Virus record (IMG/VR): IMGVR_UViG_3300036770_004723
Location: 186,001 to 250,000 of that record
Direction: 5' to 3' (one strand)
Length of the DNA: 64,000 nt
Numbering within the stretch: the first letter of the stretch is position 1; the number at the start of each line of letters is the position of its first letter. The notes under the pieces were generated by a model. The model searched no databases. It was not told where the DNA came from and saw nothing but the letters and a program-made list of their open reading frames with translations. This document shows positions 1-11,684 of this stretch, piece by piece. A program made the translations under genes and the position numbers.

Positions 1-17
1 CAGATGAATGTTTTGAC

Positions 18-500
18 TTGCTTTCAGACTTAAGACTGGCACGAAATGTCTTAGCTGTCGAAGGTGCTTTTAAAGATACTGTTGTGCAGGCGTGGATAAA
101 AAAATTTGAGATTGAGCCTCAACTAATAAATGTAACTCGTGTGGCAACAAAACAGAGTTTACTGCAAGCATCAAAAGAAAGAAATGTAAAAGCGAAAAAA
201 GCATTTAATGATTTGATGGATAAAGCAAAAGCAGTATCACAAGATCTAAAAAAGCAAAACTTAAAGAAGCTTAGTAAAGCAGTTATGACGTTCTCAGAAT
301 TGCTTGACTCTGAGCGTACATATTTGAGTAAGAGAGAGATTGAAAAATATGAAACACTAATAAAGTTGTTAAACATTGAAATCTCCTTAAACTCTGAAAA
401 CCTAGATGTTCAAGAGCGATCAGATTTACTCAAACAAAAGAGTTTAGTATTAGTGCGCTTTAGCAAACTTGACGGCATAAACCCATTTACTTTAATATAA
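18..500 (+). CDS. Hypothetical helical protein, probably 5'-truncated by the window edge
   Basis: Frame is open upstream to position 3; coiled-coil-like composition. Confidence 0.6.
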   Translation: MLSDLRLARNVLAVEGAFKDTVVQAWIKKFEIEPQLINVTRVATKQSLLQASKERNVKAKKAFNDLMDKAKAVSQDLKKQNLKKLSKAVMTFSELLDSERTYLSKREIEKYETLIKLLNIEISLNSENLDVQERSDLLKQKSLVLVRFSKLDGINPFTLI

Positions 501-503
501 GGC

Positions 504-893
504 ATGAAAATGAAAATTAAGGTTAGATTAATCTCTACTTCGGCATCTAATAGTAAAACTCCAGAAATTAAATCAAAAATATCTGAATTGGCTTCTTTGC
601 TTTTTGAGTCAAAAAATAAAATAATTAAAGAACTTAAAGTAACCAAGCCTTTAGTTAAATCTGTTGAATCACTAGGTTACGCTGTTCGATTGGCGCGTAA
701 GTCTCACGTAGCGCAGAATAAATTAGATGATCTTGCTTCTTTGCTTGGTGTTAATCCAGCACATTTAACATCTGCTGTAGATAAAACAGGTTATTGTCTT
801 CATTTCAGTTCAGGTGCTGCAACTAAAGCCATAGCTTCTTTAAAAAGAATGGCTAAGGCAGAATCTGTGGAGAGTTCTTCTAAAAAAGCCTAA
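504..893 (+). CDS. Basic putative internal head protein with SxS leader
   Basis: N-terminus MKMKIKVRLISTSAS; Lys-rich. Confidence 0.6.
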   Translation: MKMKIKVRLISTSASNSKTPEIKSKISELASLLFESKNKIIKELKVTKPLVKSVESLGYAVRLARKSHVAQNKLDDLASLLGVNPAHLTSAVDKTGYCLHFSSGAATKAIASLKRMAKAESVESSSKKA

Positions 894-1114
894 TAGAGAG
901 TAACCTAAGAAAAGAATAAGATCTTTTAGATAAAGGACTTGAAATTGCGGCCAAATGAATTTGCTTTTGCTGATCGGGTAGAAACTTGTTGTTAAAAATT
1001 CTAAAACTCACGATGTAAAAAGCTTTAATTACTCCGGCAAAAACTATTACATATAACATCACAGAATCTGCGACTGCTCTCCCATTTAAACGACGTTAGT
1101 ATTAAGGAAGCACA

Positions 1115-1669
1115 ATGAAAATTTTCGTATCGCAATCAGCTGAAGTTACACAGCAAACTTTAAAACGTAAGATGAAAATCGGCGCTAAAGTACAATTACT
1201 TATGGTCGCTTCTCCTTCAGAAATAGGAACTTTAGGTCGAGGCAAAGCATCTGTAACAATAGCACATAATTATGTTGTTACAGATATTCAAACAACTAAA
1301 TCAGGTGACATTAAAAACTGTACACTTACAGTAAAAGGACCTAAGCCTTCACCGACATTAGGTTTAAAATCTGTTGAAGTACTAACCGCAACTACATTGG
1401 CTAAGTTGATGTCAACTAAACTTAATAAAGATTCAAAAGTTGGAACTAAATCTTTAAAGTTTGTCACGGTAAAATCTAAAGACACTGCTATGGGTAACGC
1501 TAAAGATTCCAAGTTAGCTCAACTTAAAGATAAAGTTAAAGAACTTGAATCTGCATATAAAAAGGCGATATCAGATTACCATAAAGCAGAAACTGCTGTT
1601 GATAAGGCAGATAATGCACTTGATAAAGCGAAACGTGCTTTAGATCTTTATATGAGTAAAACGCTGTAG
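1115..1669 (+). CDS. Basic putative internal head protein (SxS leader), paralog of 2033..2866
   Basis: SD AAGGA; MKIFVSQSAE; C-terminal coiled coil. Confidence 0.65.
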   Translation: MKIFVSQSAEVTQQTLKRKMKIGAKVQLLMVASPSEIGTLGRGKASVTIAHNYVVTDIQTTKSGDIKNCTLTVKGPKPSPTLGLKSVEVLTATTLAKLMSTKLNKDSKVGTKSLKFVTVKSKDTAMGNAKDSKLAQLKDKVKELESAYKKAISDYHKAETAVDKADNALDKAKRALDLYMSKTL

Positions 1670-2032
1670 GTGGTTTACTTCCCACTAAAGTTAAATTAAC
1701 TGACTCTATAAAGATCTCTGATCTTGATAAGGAATTCGAGTTTGTTGAGTTTAAAGCTTAATTGAAAACATGTGATTGCTGCAATTTAGATTCAGCAATT
1801 TTCTACATGTGACCATTTTATTTAAAAGAATTATCCACAAGGTAGGAGGTGATCCATATCTCGTGGTAACTACGCCACGTAAAAGATTGTAGTAGAGCAA
1901 TGGCTCGACTGCATAGCGCAGACAACTTCTTTCTATTAGAGGATTTGCCGTGAAAAACAATGTCAGTGGCGATGTAAGTAATTAAACGAGTGTGTGCGGT
2001 GTAAAAGCCGCACCTTTATAAAAGGGAAAACC
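1670..2032 (+). ncRNA. Candidate structured non-coding RNA or leader
   Basis: About 360-nt gap with hairpins ATTGCTG/CAGCAAT, CGTGG/CCACG, GTGCGG/CCGCAC, and AGGAGGTGATCC at 1844-1855. Confidence 0.3.
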
Positions 2033-2866
2033 ATGAAAGTCTTTATATCACATTCGGCAGAATTTTCTACTGCTATTAAAAAGAAATTGGTTGTAGGTAA
2101 TACTTTTATTCTTAATACCTTAATCCTAGAAAAACCTGAACCTAAGCGACCTTCAGTTGGATTTATTACTTCTGAAATTCGTGCAGAGTACGCTAAGAAA
2201 CCTGCGGTTGTTAAAATTGAAAAAACTGAATATTTTATTGCTGAAGTTGAAGAAACTAGAACAGGCACACTCAAAAGTATTACCGCTAACAGAGTCAGAG
2301 GTACAAAATCTTTTACTTCAATGCGTTCAGGTTATAATCCGCCTGCTGTTTTAAAGTTAAGTGCTGCCAAATTGGTTAAACTTCTTGATACCAGAATCAC
2401 AAAAACTGATTCAAAAGGTACGCAAAGCATTACACTTAAATCAGTGACAGGATCGAAATCTGAAAAACTTGCACCTTCTTCGGTTGACTCTAAAATAGCA
2501 AAACTTCGATCTCAAATTCAAGATCTGACAAATCAATTAAATGCCCTTGATAAAATTAAGAGTGCTGAACGGGCTAAGATCGAAGCAGAATCTAATAAAC
2601 GTGCTTTAGATAAATTGAAGGCCGACGGTTACACTTACATTCAAGAAATTGCAGGTAAACGTGTTAAGAAACGTACTTTAGTGGAAGCAAGAAACGTTAA
2701 TCCAGGTATAGGTAAATCTGCGGCTATTTATGCAGTTAAAGACGGTAAAGAGCAAAAAATACTAGTGTGGTCAGCAAAAGATCCGATAACAAAACGTATC
2801 TTTAAGGGCTATATGTGGTGGTTTACCACTAACACTGCTGAGAAAAAATTTAGCGCTGCTGTATAA
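2033..2866 (+). CDS. Basic putative internal head protein (SxS leader), paralog of 1115..1669
   Basis: Start moved to ATG 2033 after AAGGG; MKVFISHSAE. Confidence 0.65.
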   Translation: MKVFISHSAEFSTAIKKKLVVGNTFILNTLILEKPEPKRPSVGFITSEIRAEYAKKPAVVKIEKTEYFIAEVEETRTGTLKSITANRVRGTKSFTSMRSGYNPPAVLKLSAAKLVKLLDTRITKTDSKGTQSITLKSVTGSKSEKLAPSSVDSKIAKLRSQIQDLTNQLNALDKIKSAERAKIEAESNKRALDKLKADGYTYIQEIAGKRVKKRTLVEARNVNPGIGKSAAIYAVKDGKEQKILVWSAKDPITKRIFKGYMWWFTTNTAEKKFSAAV

Positions 2867-2880
2867 TTAATTTCCAGATT

Positions 2881-2917
2881 TGGGTGCTGTATAAAAGCTG
2901 TACCCATTTATTTTCTT
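2881..2917 (+). terminator. Possible intrinsic terminator
   Basis: TGGGT...ACCCA imperfect stem followed by a T-rich tract. Confidence 0.35.
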
Positions 2918-2932
2918 TATATAAGGGCACTT

Positions 2933-3277
2933 ATGAAGAAGCTTACCATTACATTAGTTTCTACATCAAAATCCGTTAATAGTATCCAACGTAATGGTAA
3001 GCATATTGAATATAATGGATTATTGTTTCCTGATTTTGATAAGCCTATTGAAATAAATGACAAACGATACAAACGTGCAGTGCTTGCACGTAAAGGCAAT
3101 GAATTCAAATTAATTCGTTATGGCCATGTTGATTACGAAGATTTTACTACACATAAAGATCCTGAACGTAGAGATCGTTTCAGGAAGAGGTTCCGTGGTA
3201 TATTAAAATCAGACGGTAAGCCAGCATACAAAGATAAGTGGCAAGCTGCTTATTGGGCGTATAACGATCTTTGGTAA
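2933..3277 (+). CDS. Small basic viral protein (DUF5754-like) with SxS leader
   Basis: KLIRYGHVDYEDFTTHKDPERRDRFRKRF...AAYWAYNDLW pattern; leader MKKLTITLVSTS. Confidence 0.55.
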   Translation: MKKLTITLVSTSKSVNSIQRNGKHIEYNGLLFPDFDKPIEINDKRYKRAVLARKGNEFKLIRYGHVDYEDFTTHKDPERRDRFRKRFRGILKSDGKPAYKDKWQAAYWAYNDLW

Positions 3278-3294
3278 ATGTTTAAGGAAAATCT

Positions 3295-3915
3295 ATGAAA
3301 ATCACACTGGTCTCAACAAGCAAATCTAGTTTAGTAAGTGAATCAGCTAAAAAACCTAGTCTTACAAGTTGGTTTGATAAACTTTCAAAAGAAGCTCAAG
3401 AAGAATATTTGGAAGAGCATCCAAATAGTATTTATGCTAAGCATTCACTGCGTAAGGCAAATCACAAAGCGCGTAAATCCCGTACAGGATCTATGGCGGA
3501 AAATTTAGATCCAAGATTTGCAGAAGCCTCTAAGGGTTTAGATCCTAACTTGCTAAAAGAAGTTTCGAAATTAGATGAAGATCTACAACAAGCTTTCACA
3601 GAACATTTTTCTGGCTATATAGATGAACTTATGCTGGATTTTGATAGTGAACAGACTGATGACGCTTTAAAGGGACGTAAAGCTCGCGCTATAAAAGCTA
3701 AAAAAGAAGCAGACTCTAGCACAGATCCTAGATCTAAAAAGAAAGCTACGCAAGAGTTTAAGAGAGCCTTTGCTGATTATAAAGAATTAAAACTAGCACA
3801 ACAAAAAGCACAGGATATTATGAAAACTCCTGGTAAGCTTGAAAAATTTAAAAATGAATTAGGTAGAAAACTTTTAAGTAAAATGAGCAAAGTACAAGCG
3901 AATACTAGCGTGTAA
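3295..3915 (+). CDS. Putative internal head protein (double SxS leader, HPxSxYAK module)
   Basis: MKITLVSTSKSSLVSESA; WFDKLSKEAQEEYLEEHPNSIYAK. Confidence 0.6.
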   Translation: MKITLVSTSKSSLVSESAKKPSLTSWFDKLSKEAQEEYLEEHPNSIYAKHSLRKANHKARKSRTGSMAENLDPRFAEASKGLDPNLLKEVSKLDEDLQQAFTEHFSGYIDELMLDFDSEQTDDALKGRKARAIKAKKEADSSTDPRSKKKATQEFKRAFADYKELKLAQQKAQDIMKTPGKLEKFKNELGRKLLSKMSKVQANTSV

Positions 3916-3954
3916 TGCTTGTGAAAAATAAAAATTTATTAGGAAACATCAAAA

Positions 3955-5313
3955 ATGATTATTAGTATATCATCAAGAACTTCAGGTAAAGAAGTAAAAC
4001 CAGTTAAGATTCCAAAGAGTATTGCTTTCGCTGCTGAAAAAACAAAGTCTCGTATTGTTAAAGCAGTACCAGGCCGTTATATTCTTAAAAATCGCAAAGG
4101 TATGTTTGTTGTAGTAAGATTCAAAGACGAAACACGTTATACCGCAAGTGTTGGTACAAAACTTTTTTCTGCATCAAGCACTGAATCTGATGTAGAAGAT
4201 TATTTTGTTGTTGAATCTGAATCTAATCAGCCTGGTGCTCGTAATTCAGCGGCAGGAAATAAGTTGGGTAAGAAAAATCATGCTAAAGGCATGTTGGCAG
4301 CTGGTTGGTGGTTATTTGTAAAACGTGCAGATGGTAAAATGCAAAAGGCATATATAGGTGGTCGTATTAGTGGCCGTCGCCTATTAGGTTTATTAGATCC
4401 TTCAACAGTTAAAACTGAAGAACCGAAGAAACCTATCAAACCAAAAGCAAAAGCAGGTAAATTTAAAGTTGTTAAATTGAACGGTAGAAATTTATACGAC
4501 CTGAAGATAAAAGGTAAGAGTGCTGCTACTCTCAGTGCAACTCAAAAAGTTTCAAACATCAAATCTATGAAAAAATTAGGTCTTGATGATAAAGAGATTC
4601 AAGAAATTTTATCTCAACTTAAAACGGAACCACCTAAAACAGTGAAAGATTCATTAAAAGAACGTAAAGAAGAATCGAAGAGGAATGCAGACTCGCCACT
4701 GAAACAGAGAGTTAGACAACTTAATAAAGAACAGATGGCGCGTGACAAAGCTAATGAGAATTTCAGCAACAAAAAAGCACCAGAATTAAAGAACTACGGT
4801 ACGGATATGCGTACATTAGTAGATGCCATAGTAGTAGCAAGCGCTTCAAAAGATCCAAAAACACTCACTAAATATGTGAAAGAAATTGCTGCGAAAGCGC
4901 ATGAAGCTTGGGCTGCCCAATTTAGAAAAGATAATCCTGATCAAAAATCCCGCGTTAAAGCTACGAAAGATGCTGATTGGATTAAAGCAAATGGATCAGA
5001 TAAAGTTGACATTTTAAATACTAAATTTGATGACTTACCTTCTGACTGGCAAGCTGAAAATTTAAAAGGGGGTACAGCGTCACTTGCTGCTTTCATGAAA
5101 GCAGGTAAAGTGATCTCAAAAGATCCAAAAGCAGATATTTCAATACCTTTGGAAAAAGCTTCTGATGAAGTACATAAGAAGTGGCTGGAACGTAATGGAG
5201 CATGGGCGCAAGAAGATCAAAAAGTTTCATACGCTAAACTAAGTGAAACTGAGAAACAAAAAGATCGAGACTTCATTGCCAATACTATTAAAGTATTGTC
5301 GAAATACCGTTAA
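3955..5313 (+). CDS. Modular putative head protein with C-terminal tandem RyR-like domain
   Basis: N-terminal ~150 aa paralogous to 5820..7451; AHEAW...DDLPSDWQ and VHKKWLERNG..W..VSYAKLSETEKQKDR repeats. Confidence 0.6.
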   Translation: MIISISSRTSGKEVKPVKIPKSIAFAAEKTKSRIVKAVPGRYILKNRKGMFVVVRFKDETRYTASVGTKLFSASSTESDVEDYFVVESESNQPGARNSAAGNKLGKKNHAKGMLAAGWWLFVKRADGKMQKAYIGGRISGRRLLGLLDPSTVKTEEPKKPIKPKAKAGKFKVVKLNGRNLYDLKIKGKSAATLSATQKVSNIKSMKKLGLDDKEIQEILSQLKTEPPKTVKDSLKERKEESKRNADSPLKQRVRQLNKEQMARDKANENFSNKKAPELKNYGTDMRTLVDAIVVASASKDPKTLTKYVKEIAAKAHEAWAAQFRKDNPDQKSRVKATKDADWIKANGSDKVDILNTKFDDLPSDWQAENLKGGTASLAAFMKAGKVISKDPKADISIPLEKASDEVHKKWLERNGAWAQEDQKVSYAKLSETEKQKDRDFIANTIKVLSKYR

Positions 5314-5331
5314 ATTTTATAGGATACTTTC

Positions 5332-5715
5332 ATGAAAATCAAACTGTTCATAAGTGAATCTAATTGGTTTTCGGATCTAACTGAGAAAGCAAAAAAGCTT
5401 TATATAAAGGAACACCCTGAGAGTAAATATGCAAAACAATTAAGTGAACCTTCAGCTGCTAAACAAAGTGTACGTAAGATGGAAGTATACTTTATTAAAG
5501 ATGTAGACAGATTTGTTCAAATTGTGCGTATTGATCCTAAACTACTTTTTAAACACTTCTTTATGAAGCCATCGCCTCCTTATGATATGGAGTTGCATGA
5601 AGTAGTTAATGGTGTCACAAAAGGTAAAACTTTAGATCTTCCTAGATCCGCTTTAGATGCTGCACACAAAGAAAATTTAATAGGCACACGAGTTATGCTT
5701 GTTGAATTTAAATAA
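5332..5715 (+). CDS. Putative internal head protein (SxS leader, HPxSxYAK module)
   Basis: MKIKLFISESNWFSDLTEKAKKLYIKEHPESKYAK. Confidence 0.6.
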   Translation: MKIKLFISESNWFSDLTEKAKKLYIKEHPESKYAKQLSEPSAAKQSVRKMEVYFIKDVDRFVQIVRIDPKLLFKHFFMKPSPPYDMELHEVVNGVTKGKTLDLPRSALDAAHKENLIGTRVMLVEFK

Positions 5716-5717
5716 AG

Positions 5718-5743
5718 AAAAGCCGCTTAATTGCGGCTTTTTT
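5718..5743 (+). terminator. Intrinsic terminator
   Basis: AAAAGCCGC-TTAATT-GCGGCTTTTTT. Confidence 0.85.
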
Positions 5744-5819
5744 GCTATCTACATGCTGAAAAGTATAATTTAAGTATGTAAGTTTATCTTACTATTTAAG
5801 CGCTTAAAAGGAACCTGTC

Positions 5820-7451
5820 ATGACTAAACCTGCTAATTCTGTTAAGCCTGTACGTGAAGGGCAGAAACAGAAAGATAAGAAGCCTGTGGTCATTCCAAAA
5901 AGTATTAAGTTTGCAGCTGAAAAAACTAAGAGTCGCATTTCATTTGCGATTCCTGGTCGCTACATTCTTCAAAACCGTAAAGGAATGTTCGCAATTGTTC
6001 GAATCAGTGAAGACACTAAAATGTCTCCGTCAATCGTCACCAAAGTATTCAAAGCAACTGCCAGTGACATTGATCTGACTGAAGATCAGATCTTTGCACT
6101 TGAGCCTGTTGAGTTAGATTCCTTATCAGAATCTAATCAACCTGGACCTAAAAATTCAAGTGTTGGCAATAAACTAGGTAAGAAAACACGGGCACCTAAT
6201 GTACTAGCTAAAGGCTGGTGGATGTTCCGTAAAGGCAAAGATGGTAAAACAGCTAAAGCCTATATCGGTGGTCGTATTAGTGGTCGTCGTTTACTTGCTT
6301 TGTTAGATCCAGCTCAAGCACCAAAACCTAAAACAGAAGTTGTTGATCAAATTGGTAAGAAACCAGTTGTCGATACAAAAAAGATTGCTGAACTCACTAA
6401 AATCTACAAAAAACTTGGTGAGGGTATTAAACAAGCTAAAGAACGTTTAACTACTTTAAAGCGCGCTACTTCTAAAATCAGTTTAAAAGCAAAGATTAAA
6501 GAAGCGATGGAAAAACGTAAAGAAATCGCGGATCAAATCAAAGCATTAAAGTCTGGTGTTAAAGTAGAAGCGAAACCTGCGGAAACAAAACCTAAAGTTG
6601 ACGCAAAACCTAAGGCTACACAGGTTAAAACAAAAGCAGATATATCTGCACTGTCCCCTAGCCAACAAGTTTCATTTAAAAAGTTAAAAACACAAGGCAC
6701 AGAACTAGTTAAAAAGATTAAAGAATTTCAGACAAAGATGGAATCTCTTAAATCAAAACCAGCTAAAGCAAAAGTTCAATCAGCTATTGATGAATTGATG
6801 AAGTTAAAGAACGCTATTGCTAAAAAACTTCAAATGTATTTAAAGAAAGCACGAGATAAAAATACTGAACCTAAAGAAGCAGCCGTTGTTAAAAAGCCAG
6901 AGCCTGCTAAAGCTGAACCTAAAGCTGTTAAGGTTAAACCAAAGGCACCTGCAAAAAAACCTGAACCTATGAGTCAGGAAAAGAAAGAAGCCAAGGCCGA
7001 AGTAAAAGATCGAGAGAGCAAAATTGATGTTCTCGTTGAGAAACATGATAGTCTTAAAGAAAAAATCGAAAAGATTAAAGACCCAAGACAGAAGGCGAAA
7101 CTTCAATCTGCAATTGATGCCATCAACAAACGGATTGAAATCAACGCCGCTAAAAAGTCTGGAGCCAATAGTCGTTTAAAATCTACAAGTGCTGAAGATA
7201 TTTATTTCCAAACTTATAGTGGTGCCGTTCAACATGCTGTGGATACCGCTACAAAAAAGGGTTACGGCTACGATCAAGATGATTATGACCGTATCGTAGC
7301 CAACAATAGTAAAAAACCTTCAGCAGGTAAAACAACTAAATTTATATTGCCTTTAATAAAAGAAGGTAAAAGGTCAGGGCTAACAGTGGCAGTTTACTGC
7401 ACTGACGCAAATACCCCAAAACCTTATGAACTCACTTACTATATACATTAA
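5820..7451 (+). CDS. Lys-rich modular putative head protein
   Basis: Shares N-terminal domains with 3955..5313; coiled-coil and K/P/A-rich linker; separate C-terminal domain ending YELTYYIH. Confidence 0.65.
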   Translation: MTKPANSVKPVREGQKQKDKKPVVIPKSIKFAAEKTKSRISFAIPGRYILQNRKGMFAIVRISEDTKMSPSIVTKVFKATASDIDLTEDQIFALEPVELDSLSESNQPGPKNSSVGNKLGKKTRAPNVLAKGWWMFRKGKDGKTAKAYIGGRISGRRLLALLDPAQAPKPKTEVVDQIGKKPVVDTKKIAELTKIYKKLGEGIKQAKERLTTLKRATSKISLKAKIKEAMEKRKEIADQIKALKSGVKVEAKPAETKPKVDAKPKATQVKTKADISALSPSQQVSFKKLKTQGTELVKKIKEFQTKMESLKSKPAKAKVQSAIDELMKLKNAIAKKLQMYLKKARDKNTEPKEAAVVKKPEPAKAEPKAVKVKPKAPAKKPEPMSQEKKEAKAEVKDRESKIDVLVEKHDSLKEKIEKIKDPRQKAKLQSAIDAINKRIEINAAKKSGANSRLKSTSAEDIYFQTYSGAVQHAVDTATKKGYGYDQDDYDRIVANNSKKPSAGKTTKFILPLIKEGKRSGLTVAVYCTDANTPKPYELTYYIH

Positions 7452-7554: not shown

Positions 7555-9843
7555 ATGACCATTAAAAAACGAGGCAAAAAACTGCCAATCGTTGTATATG
7601 GCAAGTCTGAGTCAGATGCTACTGGGTTGTACTCTGCTGTCGCTTCAGGCGATGGCGTCGTTTCACTTAGTAATGGTGTTCAATCAATTTTAACCCATGA
7701 AAGTTTAAGCGAAGCATTGTACAATCCTATGACAGGTCAAATCGATCTGGAAGAAGATGTAGAAATGACTGCAATGGCAAGCACAGCGCAACCATTAACA
7801 GGTACTGTTAGTATTTTCAGTGCAGAATGTTCTGATGGGTGCGGTAATCATATTATCAGCGACATCAATTTATCTTTCTGTCCTTCATGTTCCGCAGACC
7901 TTCCTGAAGATGAAGAAGAATCTGAAGTTGATTTAGTTGACGAAGAAGATTCAGATCTTGACGAAGAAGATTCAGACATCGACGACGATTCAGACATCGA
8001 CGACGATTCAGACATCGACGAAGATTTAGACATCGACGAAGATTTAGAATCTGAATCTAATGAAAGTATGATTGTTGTTGCAGCGGATTCATTGGCTGAA
8101 GCGGTAGCTCAGTTTCGCCAAGTAGCCAGCCAACAAGATCGTAAAATTTTTGCATCTGAGTCTGGTTCATTTGTTTCGCATTCAAATTCTGAAGTGAATT
8201 ACGATCCAATCACCAGCGATTTTGCGGAAGAAGTTGAAGGCGATGTTACTATTGTCAGCGAATCTTCTACATCCGATGAAATCGAAGCAGATCATTTAGT
8301 TTGTTCTGGTTGTAACGCACACCACATCAGTACAAGTTCTGCAATTGTAAATTGTATTCGTTGTGGTGAAGGCTTAATCGAATCCGAAAGTGCTGATCTT
8401 GATGAAGATGACTCCGAATCTGAATTGGCTTCTTTAGCTTCTGAAATTGAAGAATTAGAAGCTGAATTAGACCTCGATGAAGATGAAGATTTTGATCTGG
8501 ATGACGACGATCTAGAATCAGAATCTAGTGATGAAGACGATCTTGATATTGATTCTTTGCTATCTGAAGCTAGCGATCTTCTTGAAGAGTTTGAGGACAT
8601 CGAATTTAATTCTGAATCCTCAGATGATCTGGATGAAGATTTAAGCGATTATGATATGGATCAAGAAGAAGACCTTGATGCAGATGATTTGCTTGAATCC
8701 GAATCTTTTGCTGAAGGTAACGAATTTGGATCTTGTTCATCAGATGACGAAGATATTGATTTAGATATTCTAGATGAAGAAATTTCAGCTTTGGATTCTG
8801 ACGACTTGGAATCTGAAAGTGCCGATTTTGAACTGGATGAAGATTTAATTGATCTGCTTTCTGAGTCAAGTGACGACGAAGACGAAGACGAAGACGAAGA
8901 AGATTTTAGCCTCGAAGATTTAGATACAGATATGCCGGAAGACGAAGACGAAGACGAAGACGATTCTGACATTGAAGGCTTCGACATTGAAGATAGCTTA
9001 GATGAAAAAGAAATGGCGTCTGAATCTATGTCTTTCGATGTAGATCTACTGAAAGCATTATCTGCTACTGAAGATCTGGATGTTAAAAAATTCCATGTTG
9101 CTCACTGTGGTAGTATTGAAGGCCAGTCCACTTGGACAGCATTCTACGGTAAATTCCCAGTAGCCATGTGTTCAGAATCTAACGTCAACGAAAACACGGC
9201 ACTGAAAAATATTTTCGAAAGCGCTAAATTCGGTGAAGCGGTTAAGGCACATGCTAATGCTTCAGGTATTGACGATGCACTTACACAATTCAAGTTTGAA
9301 AGAATTAATCCTGAACTTGAAGTCGATGCAATTGTATCACAAGAACTGGTTTCACAATGTGAAGCTCGTGTGAATGAAGCAAATGAAGCATTGAATGCTG
9401 CGTTGGCCGGTGTAGATGCTGCTAAAGATCAGGAAGTTGAACAACAACTTGATCGTGTTATGGAAGCACTGTCTGCAAGTTCATTAGGTATCAACCGTGG
9501 CGTATTTGTAGGATCTTCAAATCCAATTGCAATGCGTCTAATTTCGGCATTAAGTGCTGCTGGTATTAATCCAGACAACGCAGCTGATTTAGTAAATGAT
9601 GCTTTCACTCAAGCTGGTGATACTTATGCAGAACAACTGTTAAGTCATGCACGTAGCTTGTTGGAAAAACCTGAAGATGTTGCTCAAGCAGTAATCGAAC
9701 AAATTGTTGCTACCGCTAATAATCGCATTGTTATTCCAAAAACACATGTTGAAGTAAGTGACAAGAAAACTCAGCCGATGCAATCTGAATCTTCTTCAAA
9801 AGCTTCAGCTTCTAATCACTTCCTTGCTATCCTTGAAAATTAA
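7555..9843 (+). CDS. Acidic prohead scaffold/core protein with two Zn-ribbon-like units
   Basis: Two genes upstream of the MCP; extreme D/E content; 14 SES motifs; two four-Cys clusters. Confidence 0.65.
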   Translation: MTIKKRGKKLPIVVYGKSESDATGLYSAVASGDGVVSLSNGVQSILTHESLSEALYNPMTGQIDLEEDVEMTAMASTAQPLTGTVSIFSAECSDGCGNHIISDINLSFCPSCSADLPEDEEESEVDLVDEEDSDLDEEDSDIDDDSDIDDDSDIDEDLDIDEDLESESNESMIVVAADSLAEAVAQFRQVASQQDRKIFASESGSFVSHSNSEVNYDPITSDFAEEVEGDVTIVSESSTSDEIEADHLVCSGCNAHHISTSSAIVNCIRCGEGLIESESADLDEDDSESELASLASEIEELEAELDLDEDEDFDLDDDDLESESSDEDDLDIDSLLSEASDLLEEFEDIEFNSESSDDLDEDLSDYDMDQEEDLDADDLLESESFAEGNEFGSCSSDDEDIDLDILDEEISALDSDDLESESADFELDEDLIDLLSESSDDEDEDEDEEDFSLEDLDTDMPEDEDEDEDDSDIEGFDIEDSLDEKEMASESMSFDVDLLKALSATEDLDVKKFHVAHCGSIEGQSTWTAFYGKFPVAMCSESNVNENTALKNIFESAKFGEAVKAHANASGIDDALTQFKFERINPELEVDAIVSQELVSQCEARVNEANEALNAALAGVDAAKDQEVEQQLDRVMEALSASSLGINRGVFVGSSNPIAMRLISALSAAGINPDNAADLVNDAFTQAGDTYAEQLLSHARSLLEKPEDVAQAVIEQIVATANNRIVIPKTHVEVSDKKTQPMQSESSSKASASNHFLAILEN
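7939..8052 (+). repeat. In-frame 18/21-bp tandem repeats encoding DDDSDI/DEDLDI units
   Basis: GACGACGATTCAGACATC-like units repeated within the scaffold CDS. Confidence 0.85.
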
Positions 9844-10595: not shown

Positions 10596-11684
10596 ATGAG
10601 TAATTTAGTCAAAGGTAAAACTTTCAGTCTGCGTAACGGCGCACCGGTGACAGATCTGAAATTCAAAGGCAGCAACATGACTGCTCTTTCAAGTAACGGT
10701 GAAGTGAACGCAAATGACAATCGCGATCTGATGCACAAAATCGGCCAGCTGTTACAGTCTGTATCATCTGGTGAAATTGTTCAACAAAATGTAGGTGCAT
10801 TTGCTTCTTTATCAAATTCAGATAAAGTAAATTTGATCGCTGTTGCAAATTCTGATAAAGATAAATGGGCTGCTTTAGGTGCATCTATCGCACAAGAAGT
10901 ACGTGAACAGCAAACTCGTCAAGGTTTTTTACGCAGCATGACTGTTGTTGAAAACATGAAACAAGGCGAAGTAATGCGAGTTCCTATGCCTAAGCATGGC
11001 GGACGCGCTATTGTTGCAACTGGCCCAACTGCATTGCAGTATCAGTTAATTAATGATCGTTACTTTACACCTAGCCCGTTTGAATTAAAAGCTTCGGTAC
11101 GTGTAAGTAAGTTAGAAATGGTGCAGGCAACGCACGATTTATTAGACCATGCTTACAATGAAGCTGTTGAAGGTATGGTAACTGCCGGTGATCGTATTTG
11201 GAAAAGCGCTGCTGATCGTACTGTTGGTAAATCAAACAATTTGGTTGGTTTTAGCGGTGCTTTAACTCCGGCAGTTATTTCTCGTGCTGCTTCACGAATT
11301 CGTGAATGGAATCTTCCTGTATCTCGTGCAGTTATTGCTGCAAGTTTTTGGGAAGATATCCAATCTGAAAGTTCATGGGCAACTGCACTGACTCCAGTGT
11401 CACAGTACGAATTACTGTTAACTGGTAAGATTGCAACTATCTTCGGTCTGGATCTGATGACTGATGGTTTCCGTCCTGAAAACCAACGTGTGTTGACACG
11501 TAACGATGCTTATATTGTTGCTGATTCTGAATATCACGCTACTATGGGTTCGTTTGGTGGTATTGAAAGTACTCCAACTGATGGCTCCAACAACGGTGAA
11601 ACTACCAAAGGTTGGTTACTGTCTGAAGTAATGTCTTTCGTTATTCCTAACACACGTTCAGTTATCAAACTGCAACGTATCTAA
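10596..11684 (+). CDS. Major capsid protein
   Basis: 362 aa; position after scaffold and decoration genes; HK97-like features (GKIATIFGLDLMTD, GWLLSE near C-terminus); SD GGAG; followed by a terminator. Confidence 0.8.
   Translation: MSNLVKGKTFSLRNGAPVTDLKFKGSNMTALSSNGEVNANDNRDLMHKIGQLLQSVSSGEIVQQNVGAFASLSNSDKVNLIAVANSDKDKWAALGASIAQEVREQQTRQGFLRSMTVVENMKQGEVMRVPMPKHGGRAIVATGPTALQYQLINDRYFTPSPFELKASVRVSKLEMVQATHDLLDHAYNEAVEGMVTAGDRIWKSAADRTVGKSNNLVGFSGALTPAVISRAASRIREWNLPVSRAVIAASFWEDIQSESSWATALTPVSQYELLLTGKIATIFGLDLMTDGFRPENQRVLTRNDAYIVADSEYHATMGSFGGIESTPTDGSNNGETTKGWLLSEVMSFVIPNTRSVIKLQRI

What the first reader, a model, noticed from the sequence alone, without database searches (positions are those of the whole stretch)
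7555..9843. Hyper-acidic scaffold punctuated by 14 SES motifs and two Zn-ribbon repeats
I count 14 SES tripeptides, most preceded by a hydrophobic residue at -2 (LESES, FASES, IVSES, IESES, FNSES, LLSES, MASES, MQSES). They are spaced through D/E tracts, as expected if the scaffold is cut into short acidic peptides that leave the head. It also has a duplicated unit Y(N/D)P(M/I)T...C..C..H.IS......C..C. This independently supports S-x-S as the protease site. The acidic core would be charge-complementary to the Lys-rich leader-bearing cargo (inference).
Basis: partly seen in the sequence, partly recalled or inferred. Interest (0 to 1): 0.7.

Follow-up and report, generated by a model that had tools for sequence, protein, structure and literature searches.

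The report
Acidic jumbo-phage scaffold with repeated cut-site motif
This gene of an uncultured 287-kb jumbo phage most likely encodes the head scaffolding protein, mislabelled "ATPase" in relatives, and it carries about a dozen conserved copies of a short motif (hydrophobic-x-Ser-Glu-Ser-small) that is probably where the phage's head protease cuts it.

Summary
ORF 7555-9843 (+) encodes a 762-aa protein (29% D+E, pI 4.1) with 14 SES tripeptides, against about 2 expected (0 of 20,000 shuffles reach 14). It also has a duplicated ~105-aa module ending in a Cys4 zinc ribbon.

Twelve of the 14 SES fit a longer motif, [LMFI]-x-S-E-S-[SGAN]. Ten or eleven lie in predicted disordered acidic linkers. 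Most are conserved in position in 13 orthologs, although the surrounding acidic sequence is not.

The window is part of a complete jumbo phage of the Lu11/PaBG/Erwinia Y3 group. The gene order is:
- a T4 gp21-like head protease
- ten basic proteins, most with an MKIxVxSxS N-terminus
- this acidic protein
- a virion protein
- the major capsid protein (MCP)

The same small-x-small motif sits at the protease N-terminus and at the start of the HK97-fold body of the MCP. PaBG's MCP loses about 20% of its mass on maturation. PaBG's ortholog, gp82, is not among its 14 listed virion proteins.

The best reading is a T4 gp22-like, protease-processed scaffold whose cut-site motif I did not find described in the literature I could search. 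Cleavage, the scissile bond and exit from the head are all inferred. The "ATPase" name has no support.

The parts
7555..9843 (+). Whole ORF, 762 aa, pI 4.1, net charge -186: putative head scaffolding (core) protein, ortholog of PaBG gp82 (annotated 'ATPase')
   Evidence: (phrog_20988, E 6e-62)
7582..7908 (+). N-terminal module 1 (residues 10-118): beta-alpha-beta unit plus zinc ribbon
   Evidence: AF2 pLDDT about 88; aligns with module 2
7828..7890 (+). Zinc ribbon 1 (C92, C96, C109, C112)
   Evidence: all four Cys invariant in 14 orthologs
7909..8061 (+). Acidic linker 1 (residues 119-169), predicted disordered; contains the 18-bp tandem repeat and ends in LESES
8062..8388 (+). N-terminal module 2 (residues 170-278), a duplicate of module 1
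   Evidence: 27% identity, E 2e-5; pLDDT about 85
8302..8364 (+). Zinc ribbon 2 (C250, C253, C267, C270)
   Evidence: invariant Cys; sub-threshold Pfam zinc-ribbon hits
8389..9036 (+). Main acidic disordered region (residues 279-494) with seven SES sites and a few short helices
9037..9720 (+). Conserved C-terminal domain (residues 495-722): three-stranded sheet plus long helices (590-648). It defines the family
   Evidence: 969 clusters at E<=1e-3; no fold match in the PDB
9721..9840 (+). C-terminal tail (residues 723-762): disordered, holds the most conserved motif (MQSESS), and ends in a short amphipathic helix
7606..7614 (+). SES 18 (GKSES): no hydrophobic residue at -2, inside folded module 1, not conserved; probably chance
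8050..8058 (+). SES 166 (LESES), at the end of linker 1
   Evidence: SxS nearby in 4 of 13 orthologs, small-x-small in 7 of 13
8155..8163 (+). SES 201 (FASES), in a strand of module 2
   Evidence: 8 of 13; pLDDT 85
8257..8265 (+). SES 235 (IVSES), in a low-confidence loop of module 2
   Evidence: SxS in 8 of 13, small-x-small in 13 of 13
8383..8391 (+). SES 277 (IESES), at the end of module 2
   Evidence: 7 of 13
8413..8421 (+). SES 287 (DDSES): no hydrophobic residue at -2, not conserved; probably chance
   Evidence: 0 of 13
8518..8526 (+). SES 322 (LESES)
   Evidence: 6 of 13
8611..8619 (+). SES 353 (FNSES)
   Evidence: 8 of 13
8698..8706 (+). SES 382 (LESES)
   Evidence: 8 of 13
8812..8820 (+). 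SES 420 (LESES)
   Evidence: 11 of 13
8860..8868 (+). SES 436 (LLSES)
   Evidence: 5 of 13
9019..9027 (+). SES 489 (MASES), just before the C-terminal domain; S489 and S491 nearly invariant
   Evidence: 12 of 13; PaBG has EEATAS here
9172..9180 (+). SES 540 (MCSES), inside the C-terminal domain
   Evidence: 9 of 13; pLDDT 85
9784..9792 (+). SES 744 (MQSES), 16 residues before the C-terminus; S746 invariant
   Evidence: 13 of 13; a small-x-small-S motif is seen by eye here in most of the 120 family representatives
10596..11684 (+). Major capsid protein (HK97 fold), 362 aa
   Evidence: phrog_2522 2e-75; NF042927 2e-62
10800..10814 (+). F-A-S-L-S (MCP residues 69-73): candidate maturation site at the start of the HK97-fold body
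   Evidence: PaBG MCP loses about 20% of its mass (PMC7412058)
9862..10554 (+). 230-aa virion structural protein (ortholog of PaBG gp81), in the position that the decoration gene holds in lambda
   Evidence: phrog_16710 1.5e-48; gp81 is in the PaBG virion
504..7451 (+). Block of basic ORFs (pI 9.4-10.2). Most start MK[IV]x[IVLF]xSxS: 504-893, 1115-1669, 2033-2866, 2933-3277, 3295-3915, 3955-5313, 5332-5715. ORF 5820-7451 has an internal LSESNQPG instead

Best explanation
The ORF most likely encodes the head scaffolding (core) protein of a Lu11/PaBG-group jumbo phage.

Shown:
- It is very acidic and has three conserved folded parts: two zinc-ribbon modules and a helical C-terminal domain. These are joined by disordered acidic linkers.
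- It carries about 12 conserved copies of the linear motif [LMFI]-x-S-E-S-[SGAN].
- It lies between a T4 gp21-fold head protease with a run of basic proteins on one side, and a virion protein with the HK97-fold capsid protein on the other.

Inferred:
- In the prohead the C-terminal domain and the terminal amphipathic helix hold the protein to itself and to the shell.
- The acidic linkers hold the Lys-rich internal proteins by charge.
- When the shell is complete, the protease cuts at the hydrophobic-x-[S/A]-x-[S/A] motifs.
- That cutting removes the first ~73 residues of the capsid protein and trims the short N-terminal leaders of the internal proteins and of the protease itself.
- It also cuts the scaffold into roughly 15 pieces, most of them acidic peptides of 7-74 residues. 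One cut frees the C-terminal anchor.
- The pieces then leave, or stay as counter-ions, making room for DNA.

The bond that is cut within the motif is not known.
For: - SES and the longer motif are far above chance.
- Codons vary among sites and no DNA tandem repeat holds any of them.
- In 108 S[EDNQ]S sites of ten orthologs, the -2 residue is hydrophobic in 80% (background 26%) and the +3 residue is most often S, G or A.
- Sites are conserved in position where the acidic sequence is not: 13/13, 12/13, 11/13 and 9/13, with most others at 5-8/13, against 25% for random disordered positions.
- Ten of 14 sites lie in blocks with pLDDT of 54 or less; an eleventh, 277, is at a domain edge.
- The protease lies 2.7 kb upstream of the ORF (phrog_18299, E 1e-90). 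Its model matches T4 gp21 at Z 9.8, rmsd 2.8 A over 139 residues, followed by herpesvirus proteases at Z 5-6.
- Most of the 46 aligned protease homologs carry hydrophobic-x-[S/A]-x-[S/A]-F near the N-terminus, by eye.
- The MCP has F-A-S-L-S at residues 69-73, and the NCBIfam HK97-fold model starts at residue 79 (profile position 6). PaBG's MCP loses about 20% of its mass on maturation (PMC7412058).
- 29 of 374 ORFs have the motif within the first 16 residues, against 8.9 expected. Relatives have the same leaders.
- GC-rich relatives use A-x-A-S at all four kinds of site.
- PaBG gp82 is absent from the 14 listed virion proteins, while its neighbours gp80, gp81 and gp83 are present.
- Across 120 family representatives SES is 3.2x, ATA 4.3x and SLS 3.2x over expectation.
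Against: - There is no direct evidence that any site is cut, in this phage or in a relative.
- The PaBG proteome covers only Coomassie-visible bands, so absence is weak evidence.
- No sequence or fold similarity to any known scaffold was found.
- Three SES sites lie inside confidently folded parts.
- Several predicted fragments (74 and 204 residues) are large for leaving a capsid.
- The MCP also has an internal QSESS in its body, so the motif alone cannot be sufficient for cutting.
- The protease-peptide complex prediction gave no answer (0.31 against a mark of 0.32).
- The S-to-A switch in GC-rich relatives could reflect base composition rather than a shared enzyme.
Confidence: 0.6

Rival explanations
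1. The motif is a docking signal, not a cut site. Each hydrophobic-x-S-E-S copy, and the N-terminal leaders, bind one pocket on the protease, the shell interior or the zinc-ribbon modules. That would make the acidic protein a multivalent hub that brings cargo into the prohead. Cleavage, if any, happens elsewhere.
For: The same motif stands at the very N-terminus of many unrelated proteins, as T4's capsid-targeting sequences do. The middle residue is variable in the leaders. Conservation of a short linear motif fits binding as well as cutting.
Against: The motif coincides with the propeptide/body boundary of the MCP and with a reported ~20% mass loss in PaBG. It also stands near the N-terminus of the protease itself. 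In T4 the targeting sequence ends in the cut site, so the two roles do not exclude each other.
Confidence: 0.15
2. The protein is a retained internal head protein rather than a scaffold. It could be a polyanion that balances the Lys-rich proteins or DNA-bound cations. It could also be a DNA-mimic protein injected into the host to blunt defences. The SES copies would then serve another purpose, for example phosphorylation.
For: Extreme acidity with regular D/E arrays. The neighbours are basic proteins likely to be packaged. T4 keeps some acidic scaffold peptides in the head (own knowledge).
Against: It is not among PaBG's listed virion proteins. The gene position is that of a scaffold. There is no fold match to Ocr-like or other DNA mimics: the only such row was the AriA-Ocr complex entry at E 0.56. 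The conserved hydrophobic -2 and small +3 residues are not explained.
Confidence: 0.08
3. The SES count is a by-product of low-complexity acidic, Ser-rich sequence or of recent internal duplication, and has no function of its own.
For: The protein is 13% Ser and 29% D+E. DED, DLD and EDE are also over-represented. One 18-bp tandem repeat exists.
Against: No shuffle of 20,000 reaches 14. SDS occurs 0 times. Codons differ among sites. The flanking positions are constrained. Sites are conserved in position across orthologs of 27-68% identity.
Confidence: 0.02

Closest known systems
Phage T4 prohead core: gp22 scaffold, gp21 protease, and the capsid-targeting sequences of internal proteins IPI-III (own knowledge; review PMC9026906 listed, not read)
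   Same: An acidic core protein carries many protease sites and is cut into small peptides. The protease has the gp21 fold (Z 9.8). Basic internal proteins carry ~10-residue N-terminal leaders that end in the cut-site motif. The capsid protein loses an N-terminal propeptide.
   Different: No detectable sequence or fold similarity to gp22. The motif is hydrophobic-x-[S/A]-x-[S/A], not (L/I)-x-E. This protein is three times longer and has two zinc-ribbon modules and a large conserved C-terminal domain.
phiKZ / SPN3US giant phages: prohead protease gp175 / gp245 with the cut motif (S/A/G)-x-E (motif from own knowledge; PMC5694885 and PMC10052503 were listed, not read)
   Same: A jumbo-phage head in which one gp21-like protease processes many head and internal proteins at a short motif that has a small residue two positions before another fixed residue.
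   Different: A different phage lineage with an unrelated, much larger capsid protein. Glu is not required here: the leaders have T, Q, H, L or S in the middle, and GC-rich relatives use A-T-A-S. No inner body is known for this group.
Herpesvirus assemblin and scaffold (pre-VP22a): maturation site (V/L/I)-x-A|S near the scaffold C-terminus (own knowledge)
   Same: The protease has the same fold class (Z 5-6.3). The motif is hydrophobic-x-small followed by Ser. The most conserved site lies about 16 residues before the C-terminus, ahead of a terminal helix, which is where herpesvirus scaffolds are released from the capsid protein.
   Different: Bacterial virus. The protease and scaffold are separate genes. 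There are many internal sites rather than one or two. Binding of the tail to the capsid protein was not tested.
PaBG gp82 / phrog_20988, annotated 'ATPase' in Lu11, PaBG, Dickeya JA and Erwinia Y3/Alexandra-group phages
   Same: True orthologs: the same three-part architecture and the same gene position.
   Different: The name is not supported: no Walker A or B motif and no ATPase family hit. I found no paper that assigns these proteins a scaffold role or a cut-site motif.

Membership tests
phrog_20988 / PaBG gp82-like proteins | Significant match to the family profile, including the conserved C-terminal domain | tested here: met
   E 6e-62 for the whole protein; 3.9e-38 for residues 495-762 alone; both N-terminal modules also match. 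969 clusters found with the domain profile.
P-loop or other ATPase (the name given in relatives) | Walker A and Walker B motifs, or a match to any ATPase family model | tested here: not met
   No Walker A or B pattern. No Pfam or NCBIfam ATPase hit. No ATPase fold match: the nearest such row is an engineered ATP synthase long helix at Z 6.3, which is generic coiled coil.
Phage scaffolding protein (functional class) | Gene placed between the head protease and the major capsid protein | tested here: met
   Order is protease, basic ORFs, this ORF, 230-aa virion protein, MCP. HRDY3 and the metagenomic relatives whose loci reach the protease (L009, L017) show the same order; in PaBG the protease lies elsewhere, but gp83-gp82-gp81-MCP keep this order.
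Phage scaffolding protein (functional class) | Present in proheads, absent or fragmented in mature virions | tested here: inconclusive
   PaBG gp82 is not among 14 Coomassie-band virion proteins, while gp80, gp81 and gp83 are. That survey has low sensitivity, and there are no prohead data.
Phage scaffolding protein (functional class) | Binds the capsid protein and is needed for correct shell assembly | not testable with these tools
T4 gp22-type core protein | Sequence or fold homology to gp22 | tested here: not met
   No PHROG, Pfam or fold hit to any scaffold. P22 and SEN2 scaffold rows appear only at E 0.35-2.9.
T4 gp22-type core protein | Many sites for the head protease, giving small peptides | tested here: inconclusive
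   About 12 conserved motif copies, mostly in disordered linkers. Cutting was not observed.
Zinc ribbon | Two CxxC-type knuckles about 12-15 residues apart, conserved | tested here: met
   Eight Cys invariant in 14 orthologs. Pfam hits to S27e, A2L and DUF7575 ribbons are below threshold. An Atlas 'double zinc ribbon' cluster aligns at TM 0.58 over its 90 residues.
gp21 / assemblin-fold capsid maturation protease (for the upstream gene, G000:C1:184059-184853) | Fold match to T4 gp21 and herpesvirus proteases | tested here: met
   Model pLDDT 85. 5jbl Z 9.8, rmsd 2.8 A, 139 of 166 residues. Herpesvirus proteases Z 5-6.3. SPbeta YonD E 6.8e-5.
gp21 / assemblin-fold capsid maturation protease | Catalytic His and Ser | tested here: inconclusive
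   His131 and Ser188 are invariant in 46 homologs and lie 57 residues apart. Their superposition on gp21's catalytic pair was not checked.

The most novel reading that the evidence does not exclude
Hydrophobic-x-[S/A]-x-[S/A] is the single address-and-cut code of a very large, unstudied clade of jumbo phages (969 protein clusters). On this reading, twenty or more proteins per genome, including a ~2,000-residue helicase-like protein, carry it as a ~10-residue N-terminal leader that loads them into the prohead. The acidic zinc-ribbon protein is the hub that holds this basic cargo and is then dismantled at the same code. The code would let one predict the packaged, host-injected proteome of these phages from sequence alone.
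Probability: 0.35. Interest if true: 0.7.

Novelty: new variant of a known kind. Interest (0 to 1): 0.5.

Why it matters
- It gives a function to a widespread protein family that databases call "ATPase" or "hypothetical".
- It proposes a concrete, testable recognition motif for the head protease of the Lu11/PaBG/Y3 group. I found nothing published on its head assembly beyond one gel-based proteome.
- If the motif is right, the mature ends of the capsid protein, and the set of proteins packaged into the head and possibly delivered to the host, could be read from the genomes of hundreds of uncultured jumbo phages.
- It would also show how gp21/assemblin-fold proteases shift specificity, from x-E to small-x-small, while keeping the same assembly logic.

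Tried and rejected
- Near-identity DNA search of the phage collection found nothing.
- Pfam and NCBIfam gave no family for the acidic protein or the protease.
- Sequence searches of the PDB with the protease and with the C-domain profile gave only noise.
- Fold searches with the 762-aa model (PDB Foldseek, wide VIA search, ESM Atlas) gave only generic long-helix or zinc-ribbon matches. BFVD returned only orthologs.
- A weak Pfam hit of the C-domain to 'Gp13-like major capsid protein' (E 0.004, below cut-off) was not pursued.
- I tested whether the N-terminal leaders are simply the first strand of a domain homologous to the scaffold's N-module. Profile comparison found nothing.
- The 290-aa ORF 1994-2866 is not the protease. 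The protease lies just upstream of the window.
- The protease-peptide complex prediction scored 0.31 against a mark of 0.32, so it gave no answer.
- I tried to tie the leaders to PaBG's experimentally found virion proteins by matching molecular weights. The matches were partly ambiguous and the sample too small for a statistic. Two likely internal proteins, the 221-kDa helicase-like protein and gp83, do carry the motif near the N-terminus.
- Literature searches found no description of a scaffold or a cut motif for this phage group.
Full report
**What is there.** The finding's coordinates are exactly one ORF, 7555..9843 on the + strand, 762 aa. It has D 113, E 105, S 101 and only 32 K+R, giving net charge -186 and pI 4.1. 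The Ser-rich ORFs on the opposite strand (7848-8033, 8292-8600, 8661-8987) are probably the mirror image of its GAN-rich codons and not genes (my reading).

**The count.** There are 14 SES tripeptides.
- Whole-protein shuffles give 1.8; shuffles within blocks of 20-60 residues give 1.9-2.3; a first-order Markov estimate gives 4.4.
- None of 20,000 shuffles reached 14; the maximum was 10.
- SDS occurs 0 times although Asp is commoner than Glu.
- The Ser codons differ from site to site, using both TCN and AGY.
- The only sizeable DNA tandem repeat (7941-8048) holds no SES site.

So the repetition is maintained at the protein level. It is not a product of composition or of recent DNA duplication.

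**The real motif is longer.**
- Twelve of the 14 sites have L, M, F or I at -2. The two that do not (18 GKSES, 287 DDSES) are also the two not conserved in orthologs.
- In 108 S[EDNQ]S sites of ten orthologs, -2 is hydrophobic in 80% (background 26%). The -1 residue is mostly E, S, A or Q, and +3 is most often S, G or A.
- [LIVMF]-x-S-E-S-[SGAN] occurs 10 times in this protein, against 0.15 expected and a maximum of 3 in 5,000 local shuffles.
- Of 56 SES in the whole 374-ORF proteome, 14 are in this one ORF.

**The duplicated unit.** Residues 12-120 and 173-278 align at 27% identity (E 2e-5). The repeat is therefore a whole ~105-residue module, a beta-alpha-beta unit followed by a Cys4 ribbon, and not just the ribbon. 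All eight Cys are invariant in 14 orthologs. Pfam zinc-ribbon hits are below threshold.

**Where it comes from.**
- The window is bases 186001-250000 of a 286,584-base IMG/VR virus record that CheckV rates complete.
- The capsid protein (10596-11684) is 42-49% identical to those of phage NCTB, Pseudomonas phages Lu11 and HRDY3, and the Dickeya JA, Erwinia Y3/Alexandra and Yersinia jumbo phages. Together with PaBG, whose gp82 is this ORF's ortholog, most of these form the group that PMC7412058 calls 'Lupandier'.
- The ORF matches phrog_20988 (E 6e-62) and is the ortholog of PaBG gp82.
- Those proteins are annotated 'ATPase'. There is no Walker A or B motif and no ATPase family or fold match, so I consider the name spurious.
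- A profile of the C-terminal domain finds 969 clusters (at 50% identity) at E<=1e-3 in public metagenomes. Most are 550-860 aa with the domain at the C-terminus.

**Architecture.** An AlphaFold2 model built on 14 orthologs gives these parts:

| Residues | Part | Confidence |
|---|---|---|
| 10-118 | Module 1, folded | high |
| 119-169 | Acidic linker | disordered |
| 170-278 | Module 2, folded | high |
| 279-494 | Acidic region | disordered |
| 495-722 | Small sheet plus long helices, one of ~60 residues | high |
| 723-762 | Tail ending in a short helix | disordered |

No fold search gave a meaningful match outside the family. Ten of the 14 SES lie in blocks with pLDDT of 54 or less. Site 277 is at a domain edge. 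Sites 18, 201 and 540 are inside folded parts.

**Conservation.** In the 14-sequence alignment the acidic tracts vary freely in length and sequence, but the motifs hold their places.

| Site | Orthologs with an S-x-S nearby |
|---|---|
| 744 | 13 of 13 |
| 489 | 12 of 13 |
| 420 | 11 of 13 |
| 540 | 9 of 13 |
| 201, 235, 353, 382 | 8 of 13 each |
| random disordered positions | 25% |

- SES is 5-13 per protein in P0001-P0011 (expected 0.8-2.2) and fades in the two most distant orthologs.
- Across 120 full-length family representatives, SES is 3.2x over expectation, ATA 4.3x, SLS 3.2x, TAS 2.75x and ALA 2.6x.
- PaBG gp82 has E-E-A-T-A-S at the two best conserved positions, before the C-domain and before the C-terminal tail. 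HRDY3 has V-A-T-A-S and L-A-T-A-S.
- Most of the representatives keep a small-x-small-S motif 15-30 residues before a terminal amphipathic, often basic, helix, judged by eye.
- The general form is therefore hydrophobic-x-[S/A]-x-[S/A]-small, with S-E-S as the local dialect of this AT-rich sub-clade.

**Neighbourhood.**
- A homolog of HRDY3's head maturation protease lies at G000:C1:184059-184853, about 1.1 kb before the window starts (phrog_18299, E 1e-90).
- Its model (pLDDT 85) matches T4 gp21 at Z 9.8 (rmsd 2.8 A, 139 of 166 residues), then herpesvirus proteases at Z 5-6.3. It also matches the prophage proteins YonD, HI_1405 and MJ0335.
- His131 and Ser188 are invariant in 46 homologs, as is a Cys3His cluster.
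- After the protease comes a 315-aa ORF and then ten ORFs that are all basic (pI 9.4-10.2, summed net charge +199). Then follow this ORF (-186), a 230-aa protein orthologous to PaBG virion protein gp81, the MCP and the tail genes.
- This is the order protease, scaffold, decoration, capsid that phage lambda shows (own knowledge). HRDY3 and the metagenomic relatives whose loci reach the protease share it. In PaBG the protease lies about 130 kb away, but gp83, gp82, gp81 and the MCP keep the same order.

**The same motif in the protease's other likely substrates.**
1. Most of the 46 aligned protease homologs carry hydrophobic-x-[S/A]-x-[S/A]-F near the N-terminus, judged by eye. This phage has FKSSSF; others have FHSTSF, FRANAF, LFAPAF; HRDY3 has IAIASA.
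2. The MCP has F-A-S-L-S at residues 69-73, where PaBG has E-A-V-A-A-A and HRDY3 I-A-T-A-S-S. NCBIfam's HK97-fold capsid model starts at residue 79 at its position 6, so the fold body begins right after the motif. The PaBG paper reports that its MCP loses about 20% of its mass on maturation; 73 of 362 residues is 20%.
3. 29 of 374 ORFs have [LIVMF]-x-S-x-S within their first 16 residues, against 8.9 expected. Many read MK[IV]x[IVLF]xSxS. They are concentrated in the structural region, including seven of the basic ORFs just upstream.
4. Relatives have the same leaders, most often with S-E-S (MKIKVFVSESA, MKINVMISESA). GC-rich HRDY3 has M-x-I-A-L-A-A-S.
5. PaBG's 221-kDa helicase-like virion protein starts MGSLFTLNSLSAA, and the 2,022-aa ORF of similar size in this genome (homology not tested) has LTSISN at residues 15-20. 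PaBG virion protein gp83, the basic neighbour of gp82, starts MLIKINLLEAVAA.

**Experimental hints from a relative.** PaBG's virion proteome (14 Coomassie bands) contains gp80 (MCP), gp81 and gp83 but not gp82. The authors note proteolytic processing of several virion proteins. This fits a scaffold that is lost. It is weak evidence, because the method sees only abundant, well-staining bands.

**Most likely mechanism.** The protein is a scaffold or core protein of the T4 gp22 type.
- Its C-terminal domain and terminal helix tie it to itself and to the shell.
- Its acidic linkers hold the Lys-rich internal proteins.
- The gp21-fold protease then cuts at the motif in the MCP propeptide, the leaders, itself and the scaffold. 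Cutting at every hydrophobic-x-S-x-S would give about 17 pieces, most of them acidic peptides of 7-74 residues plus a 204-residue C-domain.
- The cut at site 744 would free the C-terminal anchor, as the maturation-site cut does in herpesvirus scaffolds (own knowledge).

What is shown: the anatomy, the statistics, the conservation, the synteny and the protease fold. What is inferred: cutting, the scissile bond, release of the pieces, and charge pairing with the cargo. The middle residue is variable in the leaders and is Thr or Leu in GC-rich relatives. The two small residues, rather than Glu, are therefore likely to be the specificity positions. By analogy with (S/A/G)-x-E in phiKZ and hydrophobic-x-A|S in herpesviruses (own knowledge), they may be P3 and P1.

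**Rivals.**
- A docking-only motif is possible and is not exclusive of cutting.
- A retained polyanion or DNA mimic is not excluded by the weak proteome.
- A compositional artefact is contradicted.
- The complex prediction of protease with residues 478-500 gave no answer and counts neither way.

**Novelty.** A protease-processed acidic scaffold with leader-bearing basic cargo is a known kind of system, as in T4. The family, its zinc-ribbon architecture and the small-x-small motif were not described in any paper I could find. I rate it a new variant of a known kind, of moderate interest. It becomes more interesting if the motif proves to be a general packaging-and-cutting code for this large clade.

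Noticed in passing
window 504-5715 and elsewhere (e.g. 15865, 28318, 31063, 38425, 40942); G000:C1:11604, 12387, 58551: At least 20 ORFs of this genome start with MK[IV]x[IVLF]x(x)SxS. That is 29 ORFs with the motif in the first 16 residues, against 8.9 expected. Relatives have the same leaders, and GC-rich relatives have an Ala version. They look like T4-style capsid-targeting leaders that end in the cut motif.
   Followed up: partly
window 1-7451 (starts at G000:C1:185805, 195 bases before the window): The ten ORFs that follow the protease (after one 315-aa ORF) and precede the acidic ORF are all basic (pI 9.4-10.2). Their summed net charge of +199 nearly mirrors the -186 of the acidic protein. 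Stoichiometries are unknown, so this may be coincidence.
   Followed up: partly
window 1994-2866: This ORF probably starts at the internal Met at 2033 (MKVFISHSAE). From there it is a paralog of ORF 1115-1669 (30% identity, E 4e-11).
   Followed up: yes
window 3955-5313 and 5820-7451: Two Lys-rich paralogs (46% identity over 246 residues) share an internal ...(E/L)SESNQPG... about 90-105 residues in. This may be an internal cut site that releases a conserved N-terminal domain. The first has a weak, sub-threshold RyR-domain hit at its C-terminus.
   Followed up: partly
L002:9004-10979 (Pseudomonas phage HRDY3): The HRDY3 ortholog is annotated as two 'ATPase' ORFs split inside the poly-Glu tract. 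Its second zinc ribbon has lost its cysteines. The split may be a real frameshift or a sequencing error in low-complexity DNA.
   Followed up: no
G000:C1:90658-92439 (- strand, outside the window): A second acidic ORF (593 aa) has four tandem SESA units and ENEFEE repeats, and is not in the head module. It holds four of the 42 SES found outside the scaffold.
   Followed up: no
G000:C1:184059-184853 (L003:1381-2175): The gp21-fold head protease carries an invariant Cys198/Cys201/Cys213/His215 cluster, apparently a zinc-binding insertion. I do not recall such an insertion in T4 gp21.
   Followed up: no
window 2933-3277: A 114-aa basic, leader-bearing ORF matches phrog_220 'minor head protein and DNA pilot' (E 1.8e-14). 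This fits the idea that the block encodes packaged internal proteins.
   Followed up: no
window 10596-11684: Besides F-A-S-L-S at residues 69-73, the MCP has an invariant A-L-S at about 30-32 and [S/A]-x-[S/A]-S-G-E at about 55-58. It also has an internal QSESS in the fold body, so the motif alone cannot be sufficient for cutting.
   Followed up: partly
window 9037-9720: The scaffold's C-terminal domain gives a sub-threshold Pfam hit to PF20036 'Gp13-like major capsid protein' (E 0.004, 16.9 bits against a cut-off of 26.4).
   Followed up: no
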